IMG/VR virus record: IMGVR_UViG_3300035703_000006
Location: 1 to 64,000 of that record
Reading direction: 5' to 3' (one strand)
Length of the DNA stretch: 64,000 nucleotides
Shown here: positions 1-14,930 of the stretch, piece by piece
Layout of the letters: each line of letters begins with the position of its first letter
Position numbering within the stretch: the first letter of the stretch is position 1
Position numbers and translations under genes: made by a program
Notes under the pieces: model-generated
The model's input: only the letters and a program-made list of their open reading frames with translations
Databases searched by the model: none
Told to the model about the DNA's origin: nothing

Positions 1-118
1 GATTTATATTACCCAGAATGGCATTACTCTTATGCTTTGGGTGAAACGAGAATAGGTAAAAACAAATCAGAAGTTGGAAACAAACCAAAAGAGTCTCACG
101 AGATTCTAGTGGTAAAAG

Positions 119-177
119 TGTGACACTCGTAGCACTGGCACACTAAACCCCCACAGCACCCCCTGATGCCCTATAAT
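119..177 (+). promoter_or_regulatory. Early promoter cassette 1
   Basis: TGTGACA(119-125)-N10-TGGCACA(136-142)-CTAAA; TATAAT at 172-177; no -35 hexamer. Confidence 0.8.
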
Positions 178-203
178 ACAGGGACACAAGCAAAGGAGAC
201 CTG

Positions 204-455
204 ATGATTGCTTCTGAGGTGTTTCATTACACTACTTCCCGTTGGGATTGGATTGATTGTAATGTGAATCAGATGTGGATTGAAGAGATTGAGGAATCTC
301 CTGATTGTTACAAGTACGTTGCTGTTGCTTACAATCCTCGCAAGGATGCAAGTATGGTGATGAGTGAACCTCGTTGCTACGCAGATACCCTAAATTGGGT
401 TCGTAGTTGGTGCAATTCTTTCTGCATCCTTCCTGAGTTCTCTGTTGCTGTTTGA
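204..455 (+). CDS. Hypothetical early protein (83 aa)
   Basis: ORF directly after cassette 1, with AAGGAG RBS upstream. Confidence 0.8.
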   Translation: MIASEVFHYTTSRWDWIDCNVNQMWIEEIEESPDCYKYVAVAYNPRKDASMVMSEPRCYADTLNWVRSWCNSFCILPEFSVAV

Positions 456-457
456 TT

Positions 458-838
458 ATGACTTTCACCTTTCCTCGTGTTTCTGCTGGCATCTACGAAG
501 TCCAGAAGGATTCTAATACTGTTGGATTCATTCGTAAAGCAACTGCTTCTAAGTGGATTGTAACTGATGTTGTAGACACTCCTCAACACGTTACAAAGAC
601 TCTTAAGGATGCAAAGGATGCTTGTATCAACCTGATTATCTTTGAGAGTGTTGACAACACTCCTGAAGATGTGTATAATGACTCTGTGGAGGTTGATAAG
701 GTTAATGCTGAACTCAATAAGGTTCTTGAGGGTTCTTTGAGAACCTATAGGCAGATTCCTGGGACTGATGAGTTTGAGGAAGTATGTCCGAGTAAGTTTG
801 GATTTGCTGAACCTACTCTAGAACCTATTGTGTTCTAA
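458..838 (+). CDS. Hypothetical early protein, acidic C-terminus
   Basis: ATG at 458, coupled to the upstream stop. Confidence 0.75.
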   Translation: MTFTFPRVSAGIYEVQKDSNTVGFIRKATASKWIVTDVVDTPQHVTKTLKDAKDACINLIIFESVDNTPEDVYNDSVEVDKVNAELNKVLEGSLRTYRQIPGTDEFEEVCPSKFGFAEPTLEPIVF

Positions 839-931
839 TGACTTATTTTGTAGTTTATTTGATACTTCTTAGTATCGCACTGGTTTTTAATTACTCTCTT
901 CATTCAGTTAATCCAAAGGACGACGATTAAA

Positions 932-1066
932 ATGCACGATTCTACTCTTGACCTGTTTTGTGAACACGAGTCTGCTGAGTATGCAGATGAGTATGCACTG
1001 GAGATTGAAAGGAAAGCAGCAGAACTTGAAGTAACTGTTGATTATTATATGGCAGAGTTTATGTGA
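932..1066 (+). CDS. Small acidic hypothetical protein (44 aa, ...EIERKAAELEVTVDYYMAEFM)
   Basis: Hand-translated, below the ORF-track cutoff; AAGGA RBS; resembles a small-ORF family I recall from cyanophages. Confidence 0.7.
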   Translation: MHDSTLDLFCEHESAEYADEYALEIERKAAELEVTVDYYMAEFM

Positions 1067-1070
1067 TCTC

Positions 1071-1129
1071 TGTGCCACTTCTGAGACCGTCCAGCACTCT
1101 TCCCGAACTAACGGGAGGGGTGCTATAAT
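1071..1129 (+). promoter_or_regulatory. Early promoter cassette 2 (degenerate right arm)
   Basis: TGTGCCA 1071-1077; TGCTATAAT 1121-1129; same 53-nt offset as cassette 1. Confidence 0.75.
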
Positions 1130-1159
1130 GTATGAATACAAACGTGATTTGATTTATTG

Positions 1160-2395
1160 ATGCTGACTCTTCTTCCTTATCAACAACGTGCTCTTGATGC
1201 TGTGCAGAAAGCAATCAGGGGTTCTGTCTATATTCCTACTGGTGGTGGGAAAACTGTTGTGATGATGGAAGATGCCCGTCAACGTGTTCTTAATGCACAA
1301 GAACCGATGACGTTTGTTGTTGTTGCACCTCGTATTCTGCTTGCAAATCAACTCTGTTCAGAGTTCGAAACATATCTCAAAGACCAGAATGTTGCTTATA
1401 TGCACGTTCATAGTGGAGAAACTCATCATCAATCCTCTACACGTCCAGCAGTCATTGCAGAATACAATGACATTGCAACTGGAAGTGGAAAGCATCAGTT
1501 TATCTTCACCACATACAATTCAATTCAACGGGTGAATGATGCAGATATTAACATTGATGTTGTGTATTTTGATGAAGCACATCATTGTGTGAAACCATCT
1601 AACTTTGTGGGTATTGCTCATACTTCAGCAGTTGCAGAAAATGCTTATTTCTTCACTGCAACTCCGAAGTTCAATAATAGCACTGAGTCAATGAATAATA
1701 CTGATGTTTATGGTAACAACATCATCAGTATTCCTGCACAAGAACTGATTGAAGCAGGTAGTATCATTCCTCCTAAAGTTGTGCCTTATGAAGCACAAAC
1801 GATTCGCACTAAGGAAAATGCTCCTTTTGTAGATGCAGAGAACATTGTAGGTATTCTGTCAGAGATTTCTGATTGTGATGCACCTAAAGTTCTTGTTGCT
1901 GCACCAAGTACCAAAGTGATTTGGTCTATGTTTACTGAAAGTGATTTGCTGCAACAACTCAATGATATGGGTTACACAATTATGCACATTACTTCTAAGC
2001 ATGGTGCTTATATCGACAAACAGAAAGTTTCTCGTGAAGTGTTCTTCGAGAAGATGAATGAGTTTGGTGCTGACCCAGACAAGAAGTTCATTGTGTTTCA
2101 CTATTCCATTCTGAGTGAAGGAATAAATGTTCATGGTTTGACTCATTGCATCATGCTTCGCAATCTTCCTGCGATTGAAATGTGTCAAACGATTGGTCGT
2201 GTGATTCGTATGCACCAAGATGACCGACAAGCAATCGCAGATGGTAAGATGAAAGCAGGAGAGTTTGCTTTTTACAGGAAACCTTTTGGTACTATTACGA
2301 TTCCTGTCAATAACAACTATGGTGATAAGATTGCAAAACAACTTCAGAATGTGATTGATGCAGTATTTGTAAAAGGTGAAGTTCCAGTTGCATAA
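1160..2395 (+). CDS. Superfamily 2 DEAH-box helicase (ResIII/DEAD-like)
   Basis: Motif I PTGGGKT, motif II DEAH, motif III TATP, motif VI QTIGRVIR. Confidence 0.9.
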   Translation: MLTLLPYQQRALDAVQKAIRGSVYIPTGGGKTVVMMEDARQRVLNAQEPMTFVVVAPRILLANQLCSEFETYLKDQNVAYMHVHSGETHHQSSTRPAVIAEYNDIATGSGKHQFIFTTYNSIQRVNDADINIDVVYFDEAHHCVKPSNFVGIAHTSAVAENAYFFTATPKFNNSTESMNNTDVYGNNIISIPAQELIEAGSIIPPKVVPYEAQTIRTKENAPFVDAENIVGILSEISDCDAPKVLVAAPSTKVIWSMFTESDLLQQLNDMGYTIMHITSKHGAYIDKQKVSREVFFEKMNEFGADPDKKFIVFHYSILSEGINVHGLTHCIMLRNLPAIEMCQTIGRVIRMHQDDRQAIADGKMKAGEFAFYRKPFGTITIPVNNNYGDKIAKQLQNVIDAVFVKGEVPVA

Positions 2396-2422
2396 ATTAT
2401 ATTATGTGTGACAAATAGAATT

Positions 2423-2587
2423 ATGCCTTTTACAAAGAAGTTTCCACAATCAGGAGAAACAATTCACATTCGAGTTCCAAAGTGTTATGCTGAACTAATT
2501 GAGGAATTGATGGTAACTTTAGATGCACGATTTGATGTAGAAAAAGGAAAACATCTTCTTCATAAGTTCATACACAATCTCACCTGA
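2423..2587 (+). CDS. Small ribbon-helix-helix-like DNA-binding protein, paralog A (54 aa)
   Basis: Hand-translated MPFTKKFPQSGETIHIRVPKCYAELIEELMVTLDARFDVEKGKHLLHKFIHNLT; strand-helix-helix pattern; similar to 10936..11100. Confidence 0.6.
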   Translation: MPFTKKFPQSGETIHIRVPKCYAELIEELMVTLDARFDVEKGKHLLHKFIHNLT

Positions 2588-2659
2588 GTCTTGAGAGTCG
2601 TTGTGCCAGTTGTAGTGGTGGCACACTAAATGAGCACTGACCCGTGATTGTGGTATAGT
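2585..2659 (+). promoter_or_regulatory. Early promoter cassette 3
   Basis: TGAGTC 2585-2590; TGTGCCA 2602-2608; TGGCACA 2619-2625; TGGTATAGT 2651-2659. Confidence 0.8.
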
Positions 2660-2683
2660 AGTTCTATGGTTGAGGAAGACCCG

Positions 2684-2851
2684 ATGACTTACGCACCACA
2701 CATTCCACATAACATTCCTTATTTGCTTGTTCCTGAGAATCGAGTAAAGTGTGTTTTTGATTGGTATAAGAGAGGGCAAGACCATCCAATGAACTTTCCT
2801 GCTTATGCTTATTGGATTCAAAAATGTGAAAGTGATGGGAGTGATTACTGA
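2684..2851 (+). CDS. Hypothetical early protein (55 aa)
   Basis: ATG 2684 after GAGGA RBS, downstream of cassette 3. Confidence 0.7.
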   Translation: MTYAPHIPHNIPYLLVPENRVKCVFDWYKRGQDHPMNFPAYAYWIQKCESDGSDY

Positions 2852-3043
2852 ATGACTACTCAAACTCTACTCAACAAAGTTCTAATGATTGAAGAATTGC
2901 TCAACGAAAAGCAACTCACTGCACTGCGTGATATGCTTTATGTGTATAAAGAACTTCAGAGTGAGGTTCATAATTATCCTCCTGAAGATACTTTGTTCAC
3001 TCAAACTCAATTTGAAATCTTTGACATTTTCGACATCAAATGA
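2852..3043 (+). CDS. Hypothetical early protein
   Basis: Abutting ORF in operon. Confidence 0.7.
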   Translation: MTTQTLLNKVLMIEELLNEKQLTALRDMLYVYKELQSEVHNYPPEDTLFTQTQFEIFDIFDIK

Positions 3044-3249
3044 CTTCAATCTCTTTTACATCTGGTGAGTTGCTTGATATTATCAAAACACTTGAGGAAA
3101 AAGAAAATCTTGCCTACCTGGTAGATTATGACCCAGGACTTGCTGCTTATTATATGAATCTTGGAAATCAATTCCAAACAATCTATGATAAGTTGCAAGA
3201 ACTCCCTGGAGAGTCTAGAGTTGCCAATCTTGTCCTTGCTGTAAATTGA
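3040..3249 (+). CDS. Hypothetical early protein
   Basis: ATGA stop/start overlap with the previous ORF. Confidence 0.7.
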   Translation: MTSISFTSGELLDIIKTLEEKENLAYLVDYDPGLAAYYMNLGNQFQTIYDKLQELPGESRVANLVLAVN

Positions 3250-3515
3250 TGATGGAAAAGCACAATCTGGTTATTCTTTCCACTGCACACCTGCATCCAT
3301 TGGAAGCAGCAAAGATTGATGAGTTTGCTTATGTTGGAAACAAAGAGTGTGCTCTTGTTAATACATCTCCAGAGATGAGAGATTTTTATTATCAAGGTGG
3401 ATTGGTTTGTTTGTGCGACCTTCTAAAAGAAGTGCAAGAAAAGCACAATGCAGATTATGTGTTGTTTGACCCCGATGCAAACACTACTGATGGGTTTAAG
3501 TATTATGATTGGTGA
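3249..3515 (+). CDS. Hypothetical early protein
   Basis: TGATG coupling; ends directly at cassette 4. Confidence 0.7.
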   Translation: MMEKHNLVILSTAHLHPLEAAKIDEFAYVGNKECALVNTSPEMRDFYYQGGLVCLCDLLKEVQEKHNADYVLFDPDANTTDGFKYYDW

Positions 3516-3575
3516 TGTGCCAGTCGTAAAGGTGGCACATTAGACAATCCAATGGGGCACTTGATGCCCTATAAT
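3515..3575 (+). promoter_or_regulatory. Early promoter cassette 4
   Basis: Perfect ATGTGCCA-N10-TGGCACAT 3515-3540; TATAAT 3570-3575. Confidence 0.8.
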
Positions 3576-3596
3576 GACTTCATACGCAACCAACTG

Positions 3597-3788
3597 ATGA
3601 CTTACGATGAAGTTTATGAAATGATTTGCCGTATGGAAACGTATGGTGGGTCATTTGTTGTTGCACTTGCTGGTGCAATGCGAAAAGCAGATGCCTCTAA
3701 TAAAAATAGATTGATTCTTGCATTTCCTGAATATGTGCAAGAATATGGTCCTGATAGCAAGTTCCCTGTCCCTACTAAGTCTCTGTGA
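3597..3788 (+). CDS. Hypothetical early protein (63 aa)
   Basis: ATG 3597 downstream of cassette 4; motif YGGSFVxALAxAxxxADxxN. Confidence 0.75.
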   Translation: MTYDEVYEMICRMETYGGSFVVALAGAMRKADASNKNRLILAFPEYVQEYGPDSKFPVPTKSL

Positions 3789-3958
3789 ACTACCTTTGTT
3801 TGGTTGATGGTCTGCTAGAATATGCTAGCACCAGTCCCTCAAACTTTGCACATTATCAGTTAATGTATTCTGAAGAGCATAGAAATGCTGATGTTCAGTT
3901 TCTTACTTTGACTGATGAGGAGTATGATGAAATGTTCCCTTATGAGGAGGATGAATGA
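3785..3958 (+). CDS. Hypothetical acidic protein (57 aa)
   Basis: Hand-translated; GTGA overlap with the previous stop; MNYLCLVDGLLEY...EEDE. Confidence 0.65.
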   Translation: MNYLCLVDGLLEYASTSPSNFAHYQLMYSEEHRNADVQFLTLTDEEYDEMFPYEEDE

Positions 3959-4134
3959 AACCTAAGTTCCGTGTTATTCTTGAAATGGCAATTGAACAAG
4001 GTGTTCAACGTGGTTGGCGTCTTGCTCATAAACATGTAGAGAATCCAGAAGAGCATGTAATCATTGAACGTATCAATGATTCTGTAATGTCTGAAATCTA
4101 CGAATACTTTACTTTTGAGGATGAGAATTTCTGA
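3955..4134 (+). CDS. Hypothetical protein (59 aa)
   Basis: Hand-translated; ATGA overlap; MKPKFRVILEMAIEQGVQRGWRLAHKH... Confidence 0.7.
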   Translation: MKPKFRVILEMAIEQGVQRGWRLAHKHVENPEEHVIIERINDSVMSEIYEYFTFEDENF

Positions 4135-4556
4135 TGTTGAAAACTAAAATGAATCCTGAAGTTAAGCAGAAGTGGATTGATGCTCTGCGTTCTGGTGATT
4201 ATGAGCAAGGTAGTGAGAAACTCCGTGGTGTAAATGGTTATTGTTGCCTTGGTGTTCTTTGTGACATTTATGCACGAGAACATGATACTCAATGGGAGTT
4301 CAGGGGTTATGATGAACTTAGTGATGAATCTAATCCACATCCAATGGATTATTGGTATTTTGATGACCAAAGTGAGTTTCTACCTAAAATTGTGATGAAT
4401 TGGGCAGGATTGAAAACTCATAATCCTTCAGTGAGAGTTGATATTGAAGATAATTTTGGTGATGATAATTCTTTTTATACCGATGAGATTGCCAATGTGA
4501 ACGATTCGGGTTATACTTTTATGGACCTTTCTAAAATTATCGAACAACAACTCTGA
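4134..4556 (+). CDS. Hypothetical phage protein with YCCLGVLC motif
   Basis: 140-aa ORF coupled to both neighbours. Confidence 0.75.
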   Translation: MLKTKMNPEVKQKWIDALRSGDYEQGSEKLRGVNGYCCLGVLCDIYAREHDTQWEFRGYDELSDESNPHPMDYWYFDDQSEFLPKIVMNWAGLKTHNPSVRVDIEDNFGDDNSFYTDEIANVNDSGYTFMDLSKIIEQQL

Positions 4557-4744
4557 TGCAAGAAGATAACACTCTGTCTCAAGGACGCATTGCAACTCAC
4601 AAATCTGTGAATGTTGCTATCTATTTCAATGATGAAATGGATGATGGTGAAGTGCGAGACTTCATTGAACGTGCCCTTGAAAAGTATCAACATCCAGATG
4701 ACATTGTGAAAAACTATGAATACTGGTATGATGTTGAGTCTTAA
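4556..4744 (+). CDS. Hypothetical protein
   Basis: TGATG coupling. Confidence 0.7.
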   Translation: MQEDNTLSQGRIATHKSVNVAIYFNDEMDDGEVRDFIERALEKYQHPDDIVKNYEYWYDVES

Positions 4745-4811
4745 GTGAGAATGTGCCAGTTGTAGCACTGGCACACTATATCCCCCAAACCCCTGCTGGT
4801 GGTGCTATGAT
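4735..4811 (+). promoter_or_regulatory. Early promoter cassette 5
   Basis: TGAGTC 4735-4740; TGTGCCA 4752-4758; TGGCACA 4769-4775; TGCTATGAT 4803-4811. Confidence 0.8.
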
Positions 4812-4832
4812 GAACGGAGTTCAAAGAAACCA

Positions 4833-5264
4833 ATGATCTCTCTGCGGAATCCAATTATGGAAATCAACTACAAAGAAGTTTATTCTCAGAAAACTGCGAA
4901 TAAAATTGAAGAATTGGTTGCTGAATCTTATTGTCTTGAGGACATTGTAGAGTTCATTGAAGAAAACTCTGAAGAAGATTTCTGTAATCTTTATGAAGAG
5001 TATGTGAATGTTGGTGAGCAGTATTCTTATGGTGCTGTAGATGCCTTCATTGAAGAGTTTGGTCTTCAATCTTTCACTGCCACTTGCTTTGAAGATGCTT
5101 ACCGAGGACAATGGGAATCTAAAGCAGATTATGCTGAAAACTATGTCACTGATTGTTATTCTATAGATCTGCCTGGTTTCCTGGAGATTGACTGGGAAGC
5201 AACATTTGATAATCTGGATGTGACCATCACTGAGAATGGTTATGTGTTCGACACTCAATTCTGA
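4833..5264 (+). CDS. ArdA-like antirestriction (DNA-mimic) protein
   Basis: Very Asp/Glu-rich; C-terminus YRGQWESKADYA...FLEIDWEATFDNL...NGYVF matches the ArdA C-terminal pattern; first gene after cassette 5. Confidence 0.6.
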   Translation: MISLRNPIMEINYKEVYSQKTANKIEELVAESYCLEDIVEFIEENSEEDFCNLYEEYVNVGEQYSYGAVDAFIEEFGLQSFTATCFEDAYRGQWESKADYAENYVTDCYSIDLPGFLEIDWEATFDNLDVTITENGYVFDTQF

Positions 5265-5267
5265 ACT

Positions 5268-5420
5268 ATGAAACTTTATCTTCAAGACAAGGCAGTTGAA
5301 TTGATTCTCTATTGCTTGGAACAACAAGCAAGTGAGTTCAATGAGGAAGAAATGAAGGATTATGAACATATCCTTCATTCCATTGAAATTGCAAATGATT
5401 CTGTTGATTTCAATTTCTAA
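5268..5420 (+). CDS. Hypothetical protein (50 aa), paralog of 10226..10387
   Basis: Hand-translated; LILYCLEQQASEFNEEE. Confidence 0.65.
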   Translation: MKLYLQDKAVELILYCLEQQASEFNEEEMKDYEHILHSIEIANDSVDFNF

Positions 5421-5686
5421 TGATGCCTGATTTTCCTACAATTCAATCTAAGGATGGCACTATGATAGTGTCATTTTATCCAGTCAAAACACCATTTGGT
5501 GATATATCTGAGACCTGGACATTTAAGGTTCTTGAGTGGAAAGGTATTGAGACAATCTCCAAGAGGTTCATTAACAAAGTTGAGAAAAAAGTTCAACTTA
5601 GGGAATATGAATCTTTTGGTTATGTTTTTGTAAAAGACAATGCGGATCTTCCGCAACTTGGTAATCCTATGGCAGGTGCTGTGTAA
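5420..5686 (+). CDS. Hypothetical protein
   Basis: TAATG coupling. Confidence 0.7.
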   Translation: MMPDFPTIQSKDGTMIVSFYPVKTPFGDISETWTFKVLEWKGIETISKRFINKVEKKVQLREYESFGYVFVKDNADLPQLGNPMAGAV

Positions 5687-5901
5687 TGTTATTTCAATTA
5701 ACTGATATTGAGTTTGATTTTGATGATGGTGAGGAAATCTCTGGAGAACTTCCTTATGATGAACAAGTTGCAGTTGCTCAATCTGTCATTGGTGAAGTTT
5801 TTGATGTCGAATCTGAAGATGACCTTGCCGATGCAGTTAGTGATTACACTGGTTGGTGTGTGAAATCTCTTAATTATGTTGCAATCTCTGAATCTCACTG
5901 A
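5686..5901 (+). CDS. Hypothetical acidic protein
   Basis: TAATG coupling; highly acidic. Confidence 0.7.
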   Translation: MLFQLTDIEFDFDDGEEISGELPYDEQVAVAQSVIGEVFDVESEDDLADAVSDYTGWCVKSLNYVAISESH

Positions 5902-5902
5902 A

Positions 5903-6097
5903 ATGCCTGAAATGAATCGTGACCAACTGATTGAAGACTATATCCAGACACTCATTGAGAATATGGACTATAAGACAATGGAGTGTTTTGTTTATGATAC
6001 TCTGAAAGAGAATCTTTCTACCTACACTGATGAGGAACTTCTCACTGAAGTGGAAGAATACAATCCAGAACTCCTCGGTCTAGACGAATCTGCCTGA
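5903..6097 (+). CDS. Hypothetical acidic protein
   Basis: ATG 5903; its TGA is the start of cassette 6 (TGAGTC). Confidence 0.7.
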   Translation: MPEMNRDQLIEDYIQTLIENMDYKTMECFVYDTLKENLSTYTDEELLTEVEEYNPELLGLDESA

Positions 6098-6169
6098 GTC
6101 TAGTGTTGAGATGTGCCACTTGTTCTAGTGGCACACTAAATGAGCACAGACCCCAAAAGGTGCTATATT
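6095..6169 (+). promoter_or_regulatory. Early promoter cassette 6
   Basis: TGAGTC 6095-6100; TGTGCCA 6112-6118; TGGCACA 6129-6135; TGCTATATT 6161-6169. Confidence 0.8.
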
Positions 6170-6226
6170 AAGAGGGTGGAAGGGGTCAGACCCACCCACA
6201 AACGTCCAAACTCTATCTTAATCAAA

Positions 6227-6430
6227 ATGACTGCTGTTGTTGATTTCTCTAAGGATGTGATGCTCGGTATGCTTCGCAAGGGGCAAACTGGAACTCAGAT
6301 TCTGGACATTCTGAATGTTCTGGTTCCTGAGCAAACTGAACTCACTCGTGAGCAAGTTTGTGAGGATCTGGGCATTGCTGATTGTCCCGAGAATGATGAT
6401 GAGATTGCCCGTGCAATGTCTGCTGTCTGA
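6227..6430 (+). CDS. Hypothetical protein (67 aa)
   Basis: ATG 6227 after the cassette 6 leader. Confidence 0.7.
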   Translation: MTAVVDFSKDVMLGMLRKGQTGTQILDILNVLVPEQTELTREQVCEDLGIADCPENDDEIARAMSAV

Positions 6431-6528
6431 GTGATTAAATAGAAACGATAGAGGGCAAGTCCCTGTTATGTCCTGATGAGGCATATCACACTTGCTCCAT
6501 CAAAACAATTCCTTCATTATTGAAACCA

Positions 6529-6717
6529 ATGTTTGTTATTTGTCCCGCATCATTTGATCTGGTTGATGCAGAGTGGTTTGATAATGTTTATGAAGCAAAA
6601 GAAGAAGCACTCGACTGGAGTGTTGAACTTGCTGGTCGCAATGTGATTGTTTATGAGGCACTTGAAGATGATGATGGTGCTTATGACTTCAAACCCGTAA
6701 GTTCAATCTGTGCTTGA
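6529..6717 (+). CDS. Hypothetical acidic protein
   Basis: ATG 6529 (TTG 6520 is an alternative start). Confidence 0.7.
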   Translation: MFVICPASFDLVDAEWFDNVYEAKEEALDWSVELAGRNVIVYEALEDDDGAYDFKPVSSICA

Positions 6718-6863
6718 TGAAGACCTTAACATTCAAGGCACCAAATAAGATGAAGACTATAATTCTTATCTTTGCAGTTGCTTTTGTATTCTCTCCTGGA
6801 GTGCGAAATGCAACTGCAAATACTCTTTACAATGTTGCTGACATTATCAGCACAAATCGGTGA
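6717..6863 (+). CDS. Small putative membrane protein (48 aa)
   Basis: Hand-translated; hydrophobic stretch IILIFAVAFVF; its TGA starts cassette 7. Confidence 0.6.
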   Translation: MKTLTFKAPNKMKTIILIFAVAFVFSPGVRNATANTLYNVADIISTNR

Positions 6864-6935
6864 GTCCAGTGTTGAGATGTGCCACCTGTAGCACTGGCAC
6901 ACTAAACGGGCACTGGAACTTTTTTCTGGTAGATT
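6861..6935 (+). promoter_or_regulatory. Early promoter cassette 7
   Basis: TGAGTC 6861-6866; TGTGCCA 6878-6884; TGGCACA 6895-6901; TGGTAGATT 6927-6935. Confidence 0.8.
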
Positions 6936-6987
6936 AAGAGGGTGGAGGGGGTCAGTCCCACCCGAGTCCCAATCTCAATTCTTTACA

Positions 6988-7644
6988 ATGGATCGCACTC
7001 AAGTTATTGCAAAGATTCAGTCCATTCTGAAACTGCAAGAGAACACTACGTTTGATGGTGAAGCATCTGCTGCTGCTGCGATGATTGATAAACTCTGCAA
7101 GCAGTATGGTGTTACGATCAGTGAAGCAACTGAAACTCAAGTTCTCGATGAATCTTTTCTCAACTTCAAACGTGTAAATGTTGCACTGACAACTCTTCTC
7201 AATGCAATTGCATCTTTCTATGATGCAAAAGCATATATGAAGAATGGTGATACCAAATCTCTGCAAGTGATTGGTTCTGAAGCACAACAAATCCAAGTGC
7301 GTCTCTATTATGATTACCTGGTGCAGGTGATGGAGAAAGAAGCAGAAGTTGCACATCAAGCAGAAAAGATTATGTCTGCTCTGCAAGGTAAAGCAATGTC
7401 CCGTAGTTTCAAACTTAATTTCCGCAAGGCATTTGCAGATAATGTTGCTCTGCGTTTGCGTGAGATGAAAGAAGCAGAGGGACGAGTTCATGATGATGCT
7501 GATGCAGTGAAAAACAAACTCTCTGCAATGCGATTCGGACGTGCCAAGAAGATGAATGGTGCAAGTGGTGCTGGTGTTGGTAGTTCTGTTTCTTTGAATC
7601 GTCAAGCAACTGGTTCTGTGACCAAACAACTCTGTGGAGTGTGA
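6988..7644 (+). CDS. DUF2786-like domain protein
   Basis: N-terminus IAKIQSILKLQENTTFDGEASAAAAMIDKLCKQYGV matches the DUF2786 pattern; FRKAFA motif. Confidence 0.7.
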   Translation: MDRTQVIAKIQSILKLQENTTFDGEASAAAAMIDKLCKQYGVTISEATETQVLDESFLNFKRVNVALTTLLNAIASFYDAKAYMKNGDTKSLQVIGSEAQQIQVRLYYDYLVQVMEKEAEVAHQAEKIMSALQGKAMSRSFKLNFRKAFADNVALRLREMKEAEGRVHDDADAVKNKLSAMRFGRAKKMNGASGAGVGSSVSLNRQATGSVTKQLCGV

Positions 7645-7663
7645 GTTTCACACTCCTTTTTTT
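7636..7663 (+). terminator. Intrinsic terminator
   Basis: GGAGTGTGA-GTT-TCACACTCC 9-bp stem followed by T7, overlapping the stop of 6988..7644. Confidence 0.75.
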
Positions 7664-7684
7664 CCTTTAATTTTTTGATACGAG

Positions 7685-8017
7685 ATGAACGCACAACTTT
7701 CGATTGATGAGTGTAAAATTATGTGGGTTGTTGGAGCACTTGAACGACTTGCAACTTTAGGTTTGCTTGGTCCTGATGTTCCACTGAAACTTTCTGCTCA
7801 TGCAGTAGAAGATTATATTCAGATTGACGAGCATCGGGAACTTTTGTTTGAGTCAGATTTTGAGATTGCAAGTATTATGACTGCACTGATCAATGATGAA
7901 TGTGATCCAGAAGTTCAAGATCCTGAAGATACAAATCTTCTGATTGATCTTCTGCTAGAGTATAAGAATAATCGCACTGAGATTGTGAAGTATGCACTCT
8001 CTTATCAACTCATCTGA
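7685..8017 (+). CDS. Hypothetical protein
   Basis: 110-aa ORF; its TGA starts cassette 8. Confidence 0.75.
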   Translation: MNAQLSIDECKIMWVVGALERLATLGLLGPDVPLKLSAHAVEDYIQIDEHRELLFESDFEIASIMTALINDECDPEVQDPEDTNLLIDLLLEYKNNRTEIVKYALSYQLI

Positions 8018-8089
8018 GTCCAATGATACCCTGTGCCACTTGTACTGGTGGCACACTAAATGAGCACGGGGTTAAAAATGTGGTATTAT
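8015..8089 (+). promoter_or_regulatory. Early promoter cassette 8
   Basis: TGAGTC 8015-8020; TGTGCCA 8032-8038; TGGCACA 8049-8055; TGGTATTAT 8081-8089. Confidence 0.8.
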
Positions 8090-8148
8090 TAAAGGGTGGA
8101 GGGAGCAGGGGTGCCTGTCCCACCCACGAGACCCATTGTTTATTCTTT

Positions 8149-8727
8149 ATGACTTCTTTCACGATTGTTAAAAAAGGTGAAGAAATCAAGTTTGATTCTC
8201 AATTCACTGATGTGAATGAAGTGCGTAACTATCTGCGTGAGCAGATGTCTTACAACAACTTCGCAATGGATCTTGTTGAGAAGAAGAAAGTGTCTGCAAC
8301 TCAAATTGCTTGGATGCATTATCTTGCAACTCAAAGTGTAATTGATTCTCAAACTCCTGTTGAGTTTGGTCCTTACAAGCAACTTGTCAACAAGATGTAT
8401 GATGCAGGTGCATATCGAGCAACTAAGTTTCAAGTGCGACTGCCTGGAATTACTCTGAGCACTGTAACTAAAGGTGTCAATGTTGGTTGTGTTTATGTTT
8501 ATGAAAACAACCAATATGTTGGTAAAATTACTGCTACTGGTGATCTGATTGGTAACGTGAGTGAGGATGTTATCAATCTTCTGGAAGATGCCAATGATAA
8601 TCTCCTGCAACTGGCAAAGATTTATGGTCACGAGACTGGTACTTGTTCAATCTGTGCTCGCACACTGAATGATCCTCTCTCTGTTCAGATGGGAATTGGT
8701 CCTGTTTGTGCCAAACGACTCGGTTGA
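8149..8727 (+). CDS. DUF6011-like Cys/Zn-motif protein
   Basis: C-terminal GTCSICARTLNDPLSVQMGIGPVCAKRL; ATG 8149 lies downstream of cassette 8 (the track start at 8023 lies inside the promoter). Confidence 0.7.
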   Translation: MTSFTIVKKGEEIKFDSQFTDVNEVRNYLREQMSYNNFAMDLVEKKKVSATQIAWMHYLATQSVIDSQTPVEFGPYKQLVNKMYDAGAYRATKFQVRLPGITLSTVTKGVNVGCVYVYENNQYVGKITATGDLIGNVSEDVINLLEDANDNLLQLAKIYGHETGTCSICARTLNDPLSVQMGIGPVCAKRLG

Positions 8728-8756
8728 GTTCTTTATTCACTTTATTCCTCAAAACA

Positions 8757-9005
8757 ATGTTTGACCTTCTTAATTTTCAACCTCATTCAATTCCTGAATG
8801 TATTCAAGCACGATATAAGTTTGAGAATGATTGGGAGATTTCTGTTGTTGCGGGTCCACCGAATTGTGGATTATATGGTAATCTGAATGAGAATACTTAT
8901 GAAGTTGCTATTTTCCGACCGAATGGTAATATGACCGAAGATGTCAATGGTTGGAATACAAAACAAGAAGTCTCTGCGATGATGTGGGTGCTGTCTCAAC
9001 TCTAG
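8757..9005 (+). CDS. Hypothetical protein
   Basis: ATG 8757; ISVV...GLYG...YEVAI. Confidence 0.7.
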   Translation: MFDLLNFQPHSIPECIQARYKFENDWEISVVAGPPNCGLYGNLNENTYEVAIFRPNGNMTEDVNGWNTKQEVSAMMWVLSQL

Positions 9006-9054
9006 ACTCGCATACCCATCAGGGATGCTGATAGGTAGAACAATCGTAGACCCC

Positions 9055-9083
9055 TTGACAAACCCCCCGATCCGTGCTATGAT
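9055..9083 (+). promoter_or_regulatory. Canonical sigma70-type promoter
   Basis: TTGACA 9055-9060, 17-nt spacer, TG-C-TATGAT 9075-9083. Confidence 0.8.
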
Positions 9084-9105
9084 GAACGAAGTTCAGAGTC
9101 AAGAG

Positions 9106-9279
9106 ATGACCACTGCTCAACGGATGGAAAAGCAATTCTTTATTTCTTTCATCCGACTTGTTGATGAGGTTCAAGGTAAGCAAAAACTTCCTTCACAGAT
9201 TCAATCGAATCGTAAGTCTGTTTGGGTGAAGCAAACACAAAATCCTAAGCAAAAGAAAGATGCTCTTGCCCGAATCTAA
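9106..9279 (+). CDS. Hypothetical basic protein (57 aa)
   Basis: ATG 9106 after the promoter. Confidence 0.7.
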   Translation: MTTAQRMEKQFFISFIRLVDEVQGKQKLPSQIQSNRKSVWVKQTQNPKQKKDALARI

Positions 9280-9316
9280 ATCTTTCTTTCATCTGTCCCA
9301 CACAAACAAACAAGAA

Positions 9317-9481
9317 ATGCTGATCAAAACTGTTTTCGACGTTCAGACCAAACAACCTGGTTATGCTGTGTGTGATCCTCACACTGAACGTTGTGGTTTT
9401 GTGACTTACAACATTCTCAATGCAATTAAAGCAGGACAATGTAAGTCTTTCACTGAAGTCCAACAACTCATCAATGCCTGA
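9317..9481 (+). CDS. Hypothetical protein
   Basis: ATG 9317, in operon. Confidence 0.65.
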   Translation: MLIKTVFDVQTKQPGYAVCDPHTERCGFVTYNILNAIKAGQCKSFTEVQQLINA

Positions 9482-9632
9482 AATGTTTGAAGTTACTTAT
9501 CAAGTTCCTTACAACAATCAAGAGTGGAGAAGTCAATACTTCAATACTCGCAAAGAAGCACAATCAATGGTAGAGTTCTATCAATCTTGTGGTTCACCTG
9601 CTAAACTCATTGAACGTCAAGTCAGCAACTAA
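9474..9632 (+). CDS. Hypothetical protein
   Basis: ATG 9474; YQVPYNNQEWRSQYF...MVEFYQSCGSPA. Confidence 0.7.
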   Translation: MPEMFEVTYQVPYNNQEWRSQYFNTRKEAQSMVEFYQSCGSPAKLIERQVSN

Positions 9633-9737
9633 ATGAAACGCAAAGAAAAGATTCAACTACTCTCCAAAGCACAAATCGGCAATGATCTTCTACTCATTGC
9701 TCAAGCAATTCTCAATTCTCAAAAGGACAAGAAATGA
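9633..9737 (+). CDS. Small hypothetical protein (34 aa)
   Basis: Hand-translated; fills the gap exactly, with an ATGA overlap to the next ORF. Confidence 0.5.
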   Translation: MKRKEKIQLLSKAQIGNDLLLIAQAILNSQKDKK

Positions 9738-9928
9738 TTCTCATTCGCAAAGAAAATCACGGGTGCATTTATACGATTGATCCAGAATCCAATGAACTTT
9801 ATTATGCTCCTGTCTATCAAGATAACACTGTAAATCTTTCTGAGTTTGCACCAGTTGATCTTGATGATTATGATGATGTAAGTGAAATTGAATCTATTCA
9901 ACAACAACTTATTCAAGCAATCAAATGA
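9734..9928 (+). CDS. Hypothetical protein
   Basis: Coupled ORF. Confidence 0.7.
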   Translation: MILIRKENHGCIYTIDPESNELYYAPVYQDNTVNLSEFAPVDLDDYDDVSEIESIQQQLIQAIK

Positions 9929-10221
9929 AACAATCAGTTAAAGATGTTATTAATCAACTTGAAAAACTGAATCCAAACGAAACAATTTTTTCACTCATTT
10001 ATACAAAGAATGATGTGAAAGAACTAGAGCATTATGATCCAATTACAGGACAAATTGTTTATCCTTATAATGATGAACTCGCAGAACAGGTTTTGTCTAA
10101 TCTAGATTGTTATGATGTAATCTATGAAACGATTTACAAGTGTATGAATGATGAAGTTTCTTATCAAGTCGATCAATTAGCAAAGAAAGAAAACATTACT
10201 ATTGAACCTGCTTCTTACTAA
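9925..10221 (+). CDS. Hypothetical protein
   Basis: ATGA overlap. Confidence 0.7.
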   Translation: MKQSVKDVINQLEKLNPNETIFSLIYTKNDVKELEHYDPITGQIVYPYNDELAEQVLSNLDCYDVIYETIYKCMNDEVSYQVDQLAKKENITIEPASY

Positions 10222-10225
10222 TACA

Positions 10226-10387
10226 ATGCAAGAAACATTTGTAAGGTTAAGTGAAGATCAAATCAATTTGATTCTATTCACCTTAGAACAACAAGAGAGT
10301 GATTTCAATTCTGTTGAACAATCTCTATGTGAAGCAATCATTGATACTTTCACCACTGCTTTAGTAGAGTTAAACACTCAAGCATAA
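10226..10387 (+). CDS. Hypothetical protein (53 aa), paralog of 5268..5420
   Basis: LILFTLEQQESDFNSVE; last gene of the early block. Confidence 0.65.
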   Translation: MQETFVRLSEDQINLILFTLEQQESDFNSVEQSLCEAIIDTFTTALVELNTQA

Positions 10388-10390
10388 GAG

Positions 10391-10500
10391 ATTATTATCA
10401 TTTATAACAAAATAACGTTATAATTGATAATTCAATTAAATGTATTAAAAAACATAGTTTAGTGAATTGTGTTGATATGATGATAGTGTTATAAAACCTT
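10391..10500. other. Very AT-rich non-coding tract (candidate DNA-unwinding element)
   Basis: Counted 20 G/C in 110 nt, and 7 in the first 60 nt; contains TTATAAC-N8-GTTATAA. Confidence 0.5.
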
Positions 10501-10557
10501 CTTTTTATTGTCTTATATTCTCTCTAAACCCCTCTGGTTCTTGTTGTCTTGGCCTGC

Positions 10558-10617
10558 ATTATACCATAAGACCTAAAAAAAGTCAAGCACCTTACAGACT
10601 CTTCTAGGGGTGGCACA
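10558..10617 (-). promoter_or_regulatory. Leftward sigma70-type promoter carrying a TGTGCCA half-site
   Basis: Minus strand: TGTGCCA (10617-10611) ... TTGACT (10586-10581), 17 nt, TG-G-TATAAT (10563-10558); half-site 54 nt upstream of the -10, as in the cassettes. Confidence 0.75.
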
Positions 10618-10624
10618 AGGAGTT

Positions 10625-10654
10625 ATTGACAAAAACCTGTCAATACTTTATAAG
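10625..10654 (+). promoter_or_regulatory. Putative rightward sigma70-type promoter inside a palindrome
   Basis: ATTGACA-N6-TGTCAAT 10625-10644; TATAAG at 10649-10654, 17 nt after TTGACA. Confidence 0.5.
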
Positions 10655-10660
10655 AATGAA

Positions 10661-10697
10661 ACTCCTAAGACTCACACATCTTATGAGTCTTAGGAGT
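10661..10697. repeat. Perfect 14-bp inverted repeat
   Basis: ACTCCTAAGACTCA-N9-TGAGTCTTAGGAGT. Confidence 0.85.
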
Positions 10698-10884
10698 ATT
10701 TTGCTAGTTATTCCTGAGACTCACGATACTCAAACCACTTCAAAAACTGGCACATCGTATCATGAGTCTCACAGATTCGGGTGTAGACTTATAGGGTGGG
10801 TGGCAGAGGGAAGATCATCAAATACTGATAACTGATAAGAATTACCCAGAATCCAGTGATTGCAATACTTTTTCGGGGCATTAT

Positions 10885-10934
10885 AGTTTTGTCCCAAAAC
10901 CCCCTATAAATAACCCTAGTTTTGGGACAAAACT
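10885..10934 (+). promoter_or_regulatory. T4-type late promoter flanked by a 16-bp inverted repeat of self-palindromic arms
   Basis: AGTTTTGTCCCAAAAC (10885-10900) ... TATAAATA (10905-10912) ... GTTTTGGGACAAAACT (10919-10934); ATG at 10936. Confidence 0.75.
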
Positions 10935-10935
10935 T

Positions 10936-11100
10936 ATGAGACCTCAAAAGTATAAGAATTTAGGTGAAACTGAAAGAATGCGTGTACCCTTATGCAAGCA
11001 AATTACAAGTTTGTGTGATGCATTAGATAAAAAAGCAGAAGATGGTTATGATGTCGTTGCTTTATTAGATTCGTTCATTGAGAGCATACACAATATGTGA
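10936..11100 (+). CDS. Small ribbon-helix-helix-like DNA-binding protein, paralog B (54 aa)
   Basis: Hand-translated MRPQKYKNLGETERMRVPLCKQITSLCDALDKKAEDGYDVVAYLDSFIESIHNM; shares K[FY]xxxGETxxxRVPxC..LD with 2423..2587. Confidence 0.6.
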   Translation: MRPQKYKNLGETERMRVPLCKQITSLCDALDKKAEDGYDVVALLDSFIESIHNM

Positions 11101-11505
11101 ATCATTCGTTATTACTTATCAGTTCGTCTTATCATTCGTTATATCCTCGCAGTTCGTGCATACTTATCTCTTCGTCTTATGATTCGTTGTCTATACTTAA
11201 CATCATTATGAGTTCATTACACAACCCCCCATAATGTTTGCTATTTGAATCAACCAGTGCTATACTATTCATGATACTCAGTTTCTGACATAAACTGGTG
11301 TCGTCCTCTGAGTATCATTAATACCCTATGAGTTCGTTACACGACCCCCCATAAGGTTTGTTATTCTTATTGACCAGAACTATATTATTCGTGTCTCTCA
11401 GTTCGTGTTATAAACTGATGCCCTCCCTTCGTTATATCTAACCCCCCATATGGTTTCGTATTAGAATAAGGCAGTAATGAATATAAACTATTCGTGATTG
11501 TTCGT
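11070..11505 (+). repeat. Strand-biased TTCGT short-repeat (iteron-like) array
   Basis: 14 TTCGT copies counted on the + strand; the six at 11105-11187 are spaced 18,12,18,18,12 nt; no ACGAA seen in the interval. Confidence 0.75.
11207..11460 (+). repeat. Degenerate 120-bp tandem repeat (2 copies plus a partial third)
   Basis: TATGAGTTC.TTACAC.ACCCCCCATAA.GTTTG at 11207 and 11327; third ACCCCCCATA at 11441. Confidence 0.75.
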
Positions 11506-11736
11506 TTATTATAATTAAACAGCACTGTTTGACACTTATATTTTGTGTTGTTGTATTCTTATATCTAACCGATGCCCCCTATATAAAAACGCATCACTAC
11601 CCTAACCTACAACGGACCGAAAACGACCTTCAAATTGTCTTTCAAATAAAAAAATTTTACCCAATTTTTTTTTTCTTCCAAGGTTCACGCACAAAAAATA
11701 AAAAATGATATATAAGTTTAGAATTCAATAAAAAAG

Positions 11737-11895
11737 ATGACAATAAGATTAGAAATTGATGATTATGAAAAGGATCTTTTAATTGATACGATTCAACATA
11801 GATTGGATACGGACAAAATCCTAGTAATCAATAATAGTTTAAAAGAAGAACTCGAAGATCTTTTAAGGAAAGTGGAAGAAGATGAATACGTATAA
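11737..11895 (+). CDS. Hypothetical protein (52 aa)
   Basis: Hand-translated MTIRLEIDDYEKDLLIDTIQHRLD... Confidence 0.6.
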   Translation: MTIRLEIDDYEKDLLIDTIQHRLDTDKILVINNSLKEELEDLLRKVEEDEYV

Positions 11896-12052
11896 TATTT
11901 CAGTCAATGGAAATGAAATATTGAGTCAAGTGCCGCAGAATGATTTACAGGAAAATCTGAAAGTTATCAGAGGACTTGTATGGACATCTGGGGGAAATGA
12001 TGAGGACATTATAGTGTCTCTAAATAAAAACGAAGGCCATTGCAATGAATGA
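11882..12052 (+). CDS. Hypothetical protein (56 aa)
   Basis: Hand-translated MNTYNISVNGNEILSQVP...GLVWTSGG. Confidence 0.55.
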   Translation: MNTYNISVNGNEILSQVPQNDLQENLKVIRGLVWTSGGNDEDIIVSLNKNEGHCNE

Positions 12053-12068
12053 TTTGTAGTGGTAGAAT
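12040..12068 (+). promoter_or_regulatory. Putative sigma70-type promoter
   Basis: TTGCAA 12040-12045, 17 nt, TG-G-TAGAAT 12060-12068. Confidence 0.55.
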
Positions 12069-12101
12069 ACTAGAATAAATTATTTTTTACAATTACTTTT
12101 T

Positions 12102-12851: not shown

Positions 12852-12860
12852 TCTTCTTTC

Positions 12861-12889
12861 TTGACCTTTAAGGACGTTTAAAGTAGAAT
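12861..12889 (+). promoter_or_regulatory. Putative sigma70-type promoter
   Basis: TTGACC 12861-12866, 17 nt, TAGAAT 12884-12889. Confidence 0.55.
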
Positions 12890-12929
12890 GCACCTATGAG
12901 ATTTGGTAAATCTTATGAGTGCATTTTTT
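12887..12929 (+). terminator. Long hairpin with T-run (probable intrinsic terminator)
   Basis: AATGCAC-CT-ATGAGATTT-GGT-AAATCTTAT-GA-GTGCATT followed by Ts. Confidence 0.6.
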
Positions 12930-13003
12930 ATAAGCTAGAAGTTCTTATGAAAAATCCGTTTTGAAAAAAACCTTTGTAAACCGTACTAAGAGATTTAAAA
13001 ATT

Positions 13004-14228: not shown

Positions 14229-14262
14229 ATTTTTGCGGAAAATTGAATTGGAAAAGTTCTCA

Positions 14263-14589: not shown

Positions 14590-14650
14590 ATAATAGTAGA
14601 GATAGCAACCTCTTTAAAAGTTCCAGTTTTACTAAAAACAGGAGTTGCAA

Positions 14651-14893: not shown

Positions 14894-14930
14894 AAAGTAT
14901 TATAGATATATAAAAGACAATTAATCTTAG

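What the first reader, a model, noticed from the sequence alone, without database searches (positions are those of the whole stretch)
119..8089. Eight-copy early promoter cassette that replaces the -35 box with a spaced palindrome
Seen: TGTGCCA-N10-TGGCACA begins at 119, 1071 (right arm degenerate), 2602, 3516, 4752, 6112, 6878 and 8032. It is always followed by a TGnTAnnnT-type -10 (cassettes 1 and 4 read TGCCC-TATAAT) starting 52-54 nt after the left arm, with no TTGACA at -35. The spacer sequence varies but its length is fixed at 10. Copies 3, 6 and 8 share a further identical 20-mer, GTGGCACACTAAATGAGCAC. Each copy heads a small operon. Established: dyads centred around -40 to -60 upstream of a lone -10 are typical activator sites (CRP, NtcA class). 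I recall a palindrome-plus-Pribnow early motif reported for marine cyanomyoviruses, so the motif may not be new, but I know of no identified binding factor. Inference: a dimeric host or phage activator recruits host RNA polymerase to all early operons at once.
Basis: partly seen in the sequence, partly recalled or inferred. Interest (0 to 1): 0.7.

Follow-up and report, generated by a model that had tools for sequence, protein, structure and literature searches.

The report
Cyanomyovirus early promoters with upstream dyad
The repeated palindrome-plus-Pribnow cassettes are real and are the family-wide early-promoter type of T4-like cyanophages, most likely docking sites for a still unidentified dimeric activator, so this is a good new example of a promoter class that has probably already been described.

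Summary
TGTGCCA-N10-TGGCACA occurs 7 times in the first 8.1 kb (0.12 expected), always on the + strand, with a TGnTAnnnT -10 starting 28-30 nt after the right arm. The copy at 1071 keeps only the left arm.

The window is the start of a 247-kb T4-like cyanomyovirus from fresh water. The cluster runs across the record ends, giving 15-16 cassettes. One of them heads a ~26-tRNA array.

The same dyad (consensus TGTGMCASTT-N4-AASTGKCACA, spacer strictly 10) lies at the same distance from a -10 in Syn9, P-SSM2, S-SSM7, S-PM2, P-TIM40, S-CRM01 and over 120 IMG/VR contigs. It was not found in four cyanophages of other families. It is therefore almost certainly the "novel early regulatory element" reported for Syn9 and P-TIM40 in 2016, a paper I could not read.

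The dyad spans about -65 to -42. It lies upstream of the -35 position and does not replace it.

Spacer positions show no pairing covariation and no T-run follows, so a terminator hairpin is unlikely and a duplex protein site is likely. The factor remains unknown.

New lead: the same 24-bp element precedes the rRNA operon and some defence genes in a sponge-symbiont Synechococcus clade.

The parts
119..142 (+). Dyad 1 (TGTGACA-N10-TGGCACA); -10 TATAAT at 172-177; heads ORFs 204-455 and 458-838
1071..1094 (+). Degenerate cassette 2: left arm TGTGCCA only, right arm CGTCCAG; TGCTATAAT with -10 at 1124-1129; heads the helicase gene 1160-2395
2602..2625 (+). Dyad 3, exact; shared 20-mer at 2618-2637; -10 TATAGT at 2654-2659
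3516..3539 (+). Dyad 4, exact; -10 TATAAT at 3570-3575
4752..4775 (+). Dyad 5, exact; -10 TATGAT at 4806-4811; first gene 4833-5264 is ArdA-like (below the Pfam cut-off)
6112..6135 (+). Dyad 6, exact; 20-mer at 6128-6147; -10 TATATT at 6164-6169; conserved leader AAGAGGGTGGAAGGGG...CCCACCC at 6170-6200
6878..6901 (+). Dyad 7, exact; -10 TAGATT at 6930-6935; the same G-rich leader; heads gene 6988-7644 (DUF2786), which ends in an intrinsic terminator at 7636-7656
8032..8055 (+). Dyad 8, exact; 20-mer at 8048-8067; -10 TATTAT at 8084-8089; heads gene 8149-8727 (DUF6011)
10731..10754 (+).

Best explanation
The cassettes are the early promoters of a T4-like cyanomyovirus (family Kyanoviridae). Each has three parts. 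First, a 24-bp dyad with consensus TGTGMCASTT-N4-AASTGKCACA, spanning about -65 to -42 and centred near -53.5. Second, a variable -35 region that in this phage lacks TTGACA. Third, an extended -10 of the form TGnTAnnnT.

Inferred mechanism. A dimeric sequence-specific protein binds the dyad as duplex DNA, and its promoter-proximal half-site abuts the -35 position. From there it helps host SigA-RNA polymerase, through the alpha C-terminal domain or sigma region 4, to occupy weak extended -10 promoters. About 16 operons would then fire together at the start of infection. They hold roughly 100 small genes, a helicase, an ArdA-like protein and a tRNA array.

The factor is not identified. I lean towards a host protein (about 55:35 over a phage-borne one), because early promoters must work at time zero and the same element precedes host genes in one picocyanobacterial clade.

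What is shown: the sequence architecture, its conservation and its geometry. What is inferred: protein binding, activation, and early timing.
For: - Non-random and strand-specific. There are 7 sites against 0.12 expected in the window. The genome holds 15 sites with an exact right arm plus a -10 at 28-30 nt on the + strand, against 1 on the - strand. All but that one lie at 224.5-247.1 kb or 1-10.8 kb.
- Fixed geometry. Among 156 IMG/VR sites with a -10 matching at least 5 of 6 positions, the offset after the right arm is 29 (88 sites), 28 (23) or 30 (33). The spacer is 10 in 39 sites, against 0-2 at any other length.
- Conserved across diverged phages. The dyad clusters in Syn9, P-SSM2, S-SSM7, S-PM2 and P-TIM40, with reversed-pattern controls of 0-1. 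S-CRM01 has 11 copies. More than 120 IMG/VR stretches hold it.
- The left arm is conserved even when sites are chosen only by right arm plus -10: CA at positions 6-7 in 49 and 48 of 52 sites, TT at positions 9-10 in 45 and 38 of 52.
- It does not behave as a hairpin. Spacer pairs 8/17, 9/16 and 11/14 pair less often than shuffles (z = -3.8, -2.2, -2.9). Mixed arms such as TGTGACA...TGGCACA are common. No cassette is called a terminator. About half the copies in this genome have a degenerate left arm but keep the right arm and the spacing.
- Early-region context: synteny with Syn9 gp63-93, the helicase, an ArdA-like gene and many ORFans.
- Host machinery may use the element. An invariant copy lies upstream of the 16S leader in 9 genomes of one Cyanobiaceae clade.
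- The dyad is enriched in cyanobacterial genomes: 38 sites against 5 in the reversed control across 401 genomes.
Against: - The RNA runs are contigs of related strains, and some span the cassettes.
- The whole dyad is essentially absent from complete Prochlorococcus-like and Synechococcus-like genomes.
- The half-site plus -10 is not enriched in 121 host genomes.
- Other cyanophage families infecting the same kinds of host (P-SSP7, Syn5, P-SS2, S-TIM5) lack the dyad. A host activator with a regulon is therefore not evident in the usual hosts, and a Kyanoviridae-borne factor or a repressor role stays open.
- If transcribed, the arms would fold at -11 to -14.5 kcal/mol, so an RNA-level role cannot be excluded on energy alone.
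- A centre near -53.5 is not a classical class I or class II activator position.
Confidence: 0.6

Rival explanations
1. PeSL-type composite element. The palindrome works in RNA as a stem-loop that stops, attenuates or stabilises read-through from the upstream operon. The -10 is an independent activator-free extended -10 promoter. The conserved cassette also serves as a recombination point for shuffling ORFans.
For: - T4-like phages are known to carry promoter-early stem-loop cassettes in hyperplastic regions in front of ORFans (PMC2839356, PMC4122927).
- Here the cassettes sit directly after stop codons in an ORFan-rich region.
- The arms would fold at -11 to -14.5 kcal/mol.
- A related strain has an indel ending next to cassette 2.
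Against: - No T-run follows the stem, and no cassette passes the terminator scan. A true terminator is found at 7636-7656 in the same region.
- Spacer positions pair less than chance.
- Mismatched arm combinations are frequent, and half the copies have no usable left arm yet keep the right arm at a fixed distance from the -10.
- The arm sequence itself, not just the ability to pair, is conserved from marine to freshwater phages and in host genomes. PeSL stems differ between phage groups (PMC4122927).
Confidence: 0.12
2. Operator for a Kyanoviridae-encoded dimeric regulator, either delivered in the virion or made very early. It would either activate the early promoters or shut them off at the early-to-middle switch. 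The host has no part in recognising the site.
For: - The dyad is confined to T4-like cyanophages among the phages tested. It is absent from P-SSP7, Syn5, P-SS2 and S-TIM5.
- It is absent or not enriched in ordinary host genomes.
- T4 sets a precedent with injected Alt and with MotA/AsiA (textbook knowledge).
Against: - No clear DNA-binding protein was found among 47 early-region ORFs by Pfam. The only hint is a sub-threshold HTH in the 190-aa ORF at 245,013-245,585.
- A position of -65 to -42 is unusual for steric repression.
- The same element is kept upstream of rRNA genes in 9 host genomes, where no phage protein is expected.
Confidence: 0.25
3. The repeats are only recently duplicated DNA, copied together with gene cassettes, and the palindrome has no function of its own.
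For: Cassettes 3, 6 and 8 share an identical 20-mer, and cassettes 6-8 share leader sequence.
Against: - Flanks, spacers and the stretch between the dyad and the -10 differ widely, while the arms, the spacer length and the distance to the -10 are held across phages whose portal proteins are only 64-73% identical.
Confidence: 0.03

Closest known systems
Early-gene regulatory element of T4-like cyanophages (Doron et al. 2016, ISME J 10:1437; Syn9 and P-TIM40)
   Same: The phage family, the genomic region (the small-gene block before the baseplate genes) and the wide conservation in cyanomyovirus genomes and metagenomes are the same. I find the dyad plus -10 in Syn9 at 48558, 51000 and 52996, and in P-TIM40 at 7 sites.
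   Different: I could not open the paper. Identity with the published logo rests on my memory of the abstract and on the location, not on a comparison. As far as I know, no binding factor was named there.
PeSL (promoter-early stem-loop) cassettes of T4-like phages RB49/phi1, T4/PST and KVP40/nt-1
   Same: Both are short conserved cassettes that combine an inverted repeat with an early promoter. Both are repeated in front of ORFans in hyperplastic regions of T4-like genomes (PMC2839356, PMC4122927).
   Different: - PeSL promoters are near-consensus -35/-10 promoters with AT-rich upstream regions.
- Their stems are G/C runs that act as terminators. The stems sit between or over the hexamers and differ in sequence between phage groups.
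- Here the -35 is missing. The dyad has one conserved sequence, lies upstream at a fixed distance, lacks a T-run and shows no pairing covariation.
Class I activator-dependent promoters (CRP at lac) and Fis/UP-element-stimulated rrn P1 promoters of E. coli
   Same: A dimer site or upstream element lies between -40 and -65 and helps RNA polymerase at a promoter with a poor -35. Use at an rRNA promoter in one host clade is also shared.
   Different: The CRP site is TGTGA-N6-TCACA, centred at -61.5 or -41.5. This dyad is 7-N10-7 (or 10-N4-10), centred near -53.5. No CRP-family or Fis-like protein is implicated.
T4 middle promoters (MotA box in place of -35)
   Same: This is the precedent within T4-like phages for a promoter class defined by a -10 plus a non-sigma element.
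   Different: The MotA box is a single asymmetric element at -30 and needs phage MotA and AsiA. Cyanomyoviruses lack both genes (PMC2984593). The present element is a dyad further upstream, in the early class.

Membership tests
Kyanoviridae early-promoter element | Conserved motif upstream of small-gene operons in many T4-like cyanophage genomes | tested here: met
Kyanoviridae early-promoter element | Lies just upstream of experimentally mapped early transcription starts | not testable with these tools
Kyanoviridae early-promoter element | Sequence identical to the published logo | not testable with these tools
   The paper is not held. No open paper quoting the motif was found.
PeSL | Near-consensus sigma-70 promoter with both hexamers | tested here: not met
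   The -10 is present, but no cassette reaches 9 of 12 in the two-hexamer scan.
PeSL | Stem-loop acting as terminator or attenuator (stable stem, T-run) | tested here: not met
   No T-run and no terminator call. No pairing covariation. The left arm is degenerate in about half the copies.
PeSL | Repeated before ORFans in a hyperplastic region | tested here: met
PeSL | Recombination between cassettes shuffles genes | tested here: inconclusive
   One indel ends beside cassette 2 in a related strain. Apparent junctions at cassette 3 are explained by cross-mapping of the cassette 8 orthologue.
CRP/FNR-type site | TGTGA-N6-TCACA, half-sites one helical turn apart, centred at -41.5 or -61.5 | tested here: not met
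   The arms are 7 bp with a strict N10 spacer. The centre is about -53.5.
NtcA site | GTA-N8-TAC centred at -41.5 | tested here: not met
   No such pattern appears in the dyad consensus.
Sigma-54 promoter | TGGCAC-N5-TTGCW, 12 nt before the start | tested here: not met
   TGGCACA is followed by 28-30 nt and then a Pribnow box.
Intrinsic terminator | G+C-rich hairpin followed by a T-run | tested here: not met

The most novel reading that the evidence does not exclude
The dyad is the site of a Kyanoviridae-specific activator that arrives with the phage. Some hosts have wired their own genes to it. In the sponge-symbiont Synechococcus clade the same 24-bp element precedes the rRNA operon and several restriction, NTPase and antitoxin-like genes. 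Those promoters would then respond to infection, as phage-sensing defence induction. Conversely, the phage may have copied a clade-specific host super-promoter.
Probability: 0.12. Interest if true: 0.85.

Novelty: new member of a known kind. Interest (0 to 1): 0.45.

Why it matters
T4-like cyanophages kill a large share of marine and freshwater picocyanobacteria, and their first minutes of gene expression decide takeover. They lack T4's Alt, Mod, MotA and AsiA. How host polymerase is steered to roughly 100 early genes is therefore an open point.

This analysis adds four things:
- A sharper definition of the element: a 10-4-10 dyad with a strict spacer, a promoter-proximal half-site that is essential, and a 7-nt gap to the -35 position.
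- Evidence against a hairpin role.
- Restriction of the element to the Kyanoviridae.
- Natural host copies at an rRNA promoter.

Together these turn 'unknown factor' into a straightforward pull-down and reporter experiment. They also supply a portable, probably strong promoter module for cyanobacterial genetics.

Tried and rejected
- Literature. Ten full-text searches and several look-ups did not yield the Doron et al. 2016 text or any open paper giving the motif. Sullivan 2010 and Clokie 2010 mention only sigma-70-like, NtcA, Pho and late promoters.
- RNA evidence. The runs that hold the window are freshwater metagenome or metatranscriptome contigs of related strains and give no 5' ends. I first read loose ends at 2602 and 2643 as cassette-mediated rearrangement. 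I dropped that reading because one contig of the cassette 8 orthologue cross-mapping onto cassette 3 explains both.
- Rfam. There is nothing in window 1-16000 at E <= 0.1.
- Leader hairpins (GGGTGG...CCCACC) after cassettes 6-8 fold no better than shuffles, with z from -0.1 to -1.0. I keep them as conserved sequence, not as structure.
- Host regulon. The whole dyad is not enriched in 5 complete host genomes, and the half-site plus -10 is not enriched in 121 genomes. Conserved half-sites before rpmI and clpC in a few Cyanobium-like genomes may simply reflect close relatedness.
- Wider cyanobacteria. Dyad neighbours across Cyanobacteriia have no common function. They include an MFS transporter, ppk, a phycobilisome gene, a glycosyltransferase and kinases, and seven sites lie inside tyrS.
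- Candidate factors. The HTH_17 protein next to a dyad in the sponge-symbiont clade is sporadic (18 of 151 genomes) and absent from the phage. The P-TIM40 AbrB-like gp091 has no convincing homologue here. Pfam found no clear regulator among 47 early ORFs.
- I did not run a complex prediction, because no candidate justified it.
Full report
WHAT THE WINDOW IS

The window is the first 64 kb of a 247,112-bp linear IMG/VR virus record with 34% G+C. Baseplate wedge, tail sheath, head-closure and portal proteins match T4-type PHROGs. The portal is 64-73% identical to those of S-SSM7, P-SSM2, S-SKS1 and other cyanomyoviruses. The genome carries psbA and psbD, and the psbA is closest to a freshwater Cyanobium (91%). 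The public runs that hold the sequence are freshwater metagenomes. It is therefore a freshwater T4-like cyanophage of the family Kyanoviridae. No closely similar record was visible in the phage collection, although the tool may hide the window's own record.

THE OBSERVATION

TGTGCCA-N10-TGGCACA is exact at 2602, 3516, 4752, 6112, 6878 and 8032. It has one mismatch at 119 (TGTGACA). That is 7 matches against 0.12 expected. At 1071 only the left arm survives.

A -10 hexamer starts 28-30 nt after the right arm in every copy, which is 52-54 nt after the left-arm start. Most are preceded by TG. The shared 20-mer is exact at 2618, 6128 and 8048. No cassette passes a two-hexamer sigma-70 scan and none is called a terminator. 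A genuine terminator at 7636-7656 is detected in the same stretch.

- A left-degenerate cassette lies at 10731.
- The cluster continues at the other end of the record, at 224577, 233535, 236408, 242266, 244005 and 245547, and perhaps 231735.

T4-like genomes are circularly permuted, so this is one early region of about 33 kb. All copies are on the + strand, and each precedes 2-22 small ORFs. The copy at 224577 heads an array of about 26 tRNA genes.

Early-region ORFs are mostly ORFans. The exceptions are a helicase, an ArdA-like protein (below the Pfam cut-off), HNH and NUMOD3 endonucleases, a metallophosphatase and a CAAD protein. The block is syntenic with Syn9 gp63-gp93, which also contains the helicase and ends at the baseplate genes.

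HOW WIDESPREAD THE ELEMENT IS

I oriented the 233 sites by the better -10. The best hexamer matches at least 5 of 6 positions in 156 of them, and in those it lies 29 nt (88 sites), 28 nt (23) or 30 nt (33) after the right arm.

The five 39-50 kb contigs I checked are rated 15-23% complete, so they are fragments of genomes of about 200 kb, and none carries a T7-type polymerase.

The dyad clusters in Syn9, P-SSM2, S-SSM7, S-PM2 and P-TIM40, with 0-1 hits for the reversed control. The freshwater T4-like S-CRM01 has 11 copies. P-SSP7, Syn5, P-SS2 and S-TIM5 have none. The element is thus a trait of T4-like cyanophages.

I believe it is the 'novel regulatory element' that Doron et al. (2016) tied to early transcription starts in Syn9 and P-TIM40. 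That paper is not held here, so this rests on memory and on matching location.

ANATOMY

I took 52 sites from five phages, chosen only by an exact right arm plus a -10. They give the consensus TGTGMCASTT-N4-AASTGKCACA:
- The inner left CA is kept in 49 and 48 of 52 sites.
- TT at positions 9-10 is kept in 45 and 38 of 52.
- The outer TGTG is kept in about 71-77%.

The spacer is strictly 10, with 39 sites at N10 against 0-2 at every other length from 4 to 16.

With the hexamer at -12 to -7, the dyad spans about -65 to -42. In S-SSM7 and P-SSM2 a TTGnnn hexamer usually begins 7 nt after the dyad and 16-17 nt before the -10. The dyad is therefore an upstream element that abuts the -35 position, not a substitute for it. 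In this phage the -35 position reads AGCACA, CCCACA or CCCCAA. In P-TIM40 it reads CACTAC.

HAIRPIN OR PROTEIN SITE

As RNA the arms would fold at -11 to -14.5 kcal/mol. Four results argue against selection for pairing:
- Among 153 oriented, non-identical IMG/VR sites, spacer pairs 8/17, 9/16 and 11/14 are complementary less often than in column shuffles (z = -3.8, -2.2, -2.9). Positions 8 and 17 are both S but tend to be the same letter.
- Arms with C or A at position 5 and G or T at position 20 combine freely, giving mismatched pairs.
- Half the copies in this genome have a degenerate left arm yet keep the right arm and its distance to the -10.
- No T-run follows the stem.

This pattern fits two half-sites read independently on duplex DNA by a rigid dimer, with the promoter-proximal half-site the more important. 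It does not fit the PeSL stem-loops of other T4-like phages. Those are G/C-rich terminators of variable sequence placed within near-consensus promoters (PMC2839356, PMC4122927).

WHO BINDS

This is unresolved.

Evidence for a host factor:
- Early promoters must work on arrival, and cyanomyoviruses lack alt, mod, motA and asiA (PMC2984593).
- In 201 genomes of the host family the dyad (M/K version) occurs in 9 genomes, against 0 for the control.
- Four of those hits, and six of 30 16S-upstream loci when mismatches are allowed, lie about 430-450 nt upstream of the 16S rRNA gene.
- In nine species-level genomes the element T(G/A)TGACR-N10-TGGCACA is conserved there while its flanks vary, and TGCTACCTT starts 30 nt downstream.
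- The spacer also resembles phage spacers: GGTGAATTAG in the host against GTTGGATTAG in P-TIM40.
- DNA of this clade sits in sponge metagenomes, so it is probably Candidatus Synechococcus spongiarum. That name is my inference.
- Five genomes of the clade hold 20 sites at up to one mismatch, against 7 for the control. Several look exactly like phage sites and precede an AAA_16/BrxC-like NTPase, HsdR, a XamI-type endonuclease and an HTH_17 protein, often with TTGACR 7 nt after the dyad.
- Across 401 Cyanobacteriia genomes the dyad occurs 38 times against 5 for the control. Seven of those are inside tyrS, and the neighbouring genes share no theme.

Evidence against a general host regulon:
- rRNA upstream regions of Prochlorococcus-like and other family members contain no arm at all.
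- Five complete host genomes show no enrichment.
- The half-site plus -10 is not enriched in 121 genomes.
- Other phage families on these hosts lack the dyad.

A factor carried or made by the phage, or a repressor role at the early-to-middle switch, therefore stays possible. Pfam found no clear regulator among 47 early ORFs. The HTH_17 protein is sporadic and absent from the phage.

VERDICT

The interpretation as a co-ordinated early-promoter class with a dimer site is the best reading, at about 0.6 for activation by a dyad-binding protein. That these are promoters is much more certain.

The motif is very probably already published, so this is a new member of a known kind. Three things go beyond what I know to be published: the refined geometry, the evidence against a hairpin, and the host copies at an rRNA promoter and at defence genes in a sponge-symbiont clade. 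They make the open question of the factor directly testable.

Noticed in passing
G000 224,687-227,760 (outside the window; locus L265 4687-7760): An array of about 26 tRNA genes lies directly downstream of the early-type cassette at 224577, so the phage tRNAs appear to be driven by an early promoter.
   Followed up: partly
L265 8357-8513 (G000 228,357-228,513) and L266 10849-10965 (G000 244,849-244,965): There is a borderline permuted-tmRNA match (47.9 bits against a 47-bit cut-off). An abiF RNA motif (50.8 bits) is immediately followed by a tRNA inside the early region.
   Followed up: no
Host loci L227-L234, L219 and L235-L239 (about 430-450 nt upstream of 16S rRNA): The same 24-bp dyad is invariant upstream of the rRNA operon in nine genomes of one Cyanobiaceae clade found in sponge metagenomes. 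It is absent upstream of 16S in the other family members examined.
   Followed up: yes
Host loci L318-L327 (sponge-symbiont clade): Further phage-like dyads, some identical to S-SSM7 sites, precede an AAA_16/BrxC-like NTPase, a type I restriction R subunit, a XamI-type endonuclease and an HTH_17 antitoxin-like gene. A shared GTTGAG lies just before the left arm, as in phage cassettes 6 and 7.
   Followed up: partly
window 651-679 and 9055-9083: A perfect sigma-70 consensus (TTGACA-17-TATAAT) lies inside ORF 458-838. A second site, TTGACA-17-TATGAT with an upstream TG, lies at 9055-9083. These are possible middle-class or internal promoters.
   Followed up: no
window 7636-7656 and 10661-10697: A clear intrinsic terminator (9-bp stem plus T7) ends the operon of cassette 7. 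A 16-bp-stem hairpin lies on the minus strand just before the ninth cassette.
   Followed up: no
window 6170-6200, 6936-6965, 8090-8125, 10790-10805; G000 224,636-224,660: A conserved G-rich leader (AAGRGGGTGGAGGG...CCCACC) starts right after the -10 in one subclass of cassettes and recurs in many IMG/VR contigs. Its fold is no better than shuffles, so its meaning is unexplained.
   Followed up: partly
window 837-1100: A related strain in a freshwater RNA run lacks this 264-bp segment (ORF 932-1066) and joins gene 458-838 directly to cassette 2.
   Followed up: no
L196 (NYUL01000008.1, 49-kb contig of a 'Gammaproteobacteria' MAG) and L224 (contig of host MAG G140, GC 0.40): The first contig carries a psbA 94% identical to the phage's. 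The second carries a 44-bp perfect palindrome around the dyad, with TATAAT 29 nt downstream. Both look like cyanophage DNA binned into bacterial MAGs.
   Followed up: no
window 4833-5264: The first gene after cassette 5 resembles the antirestriction protein ArdA (E = 5e-5, below the Pfam cut-off). This fits an early anti-defence role.
   Followed up: no
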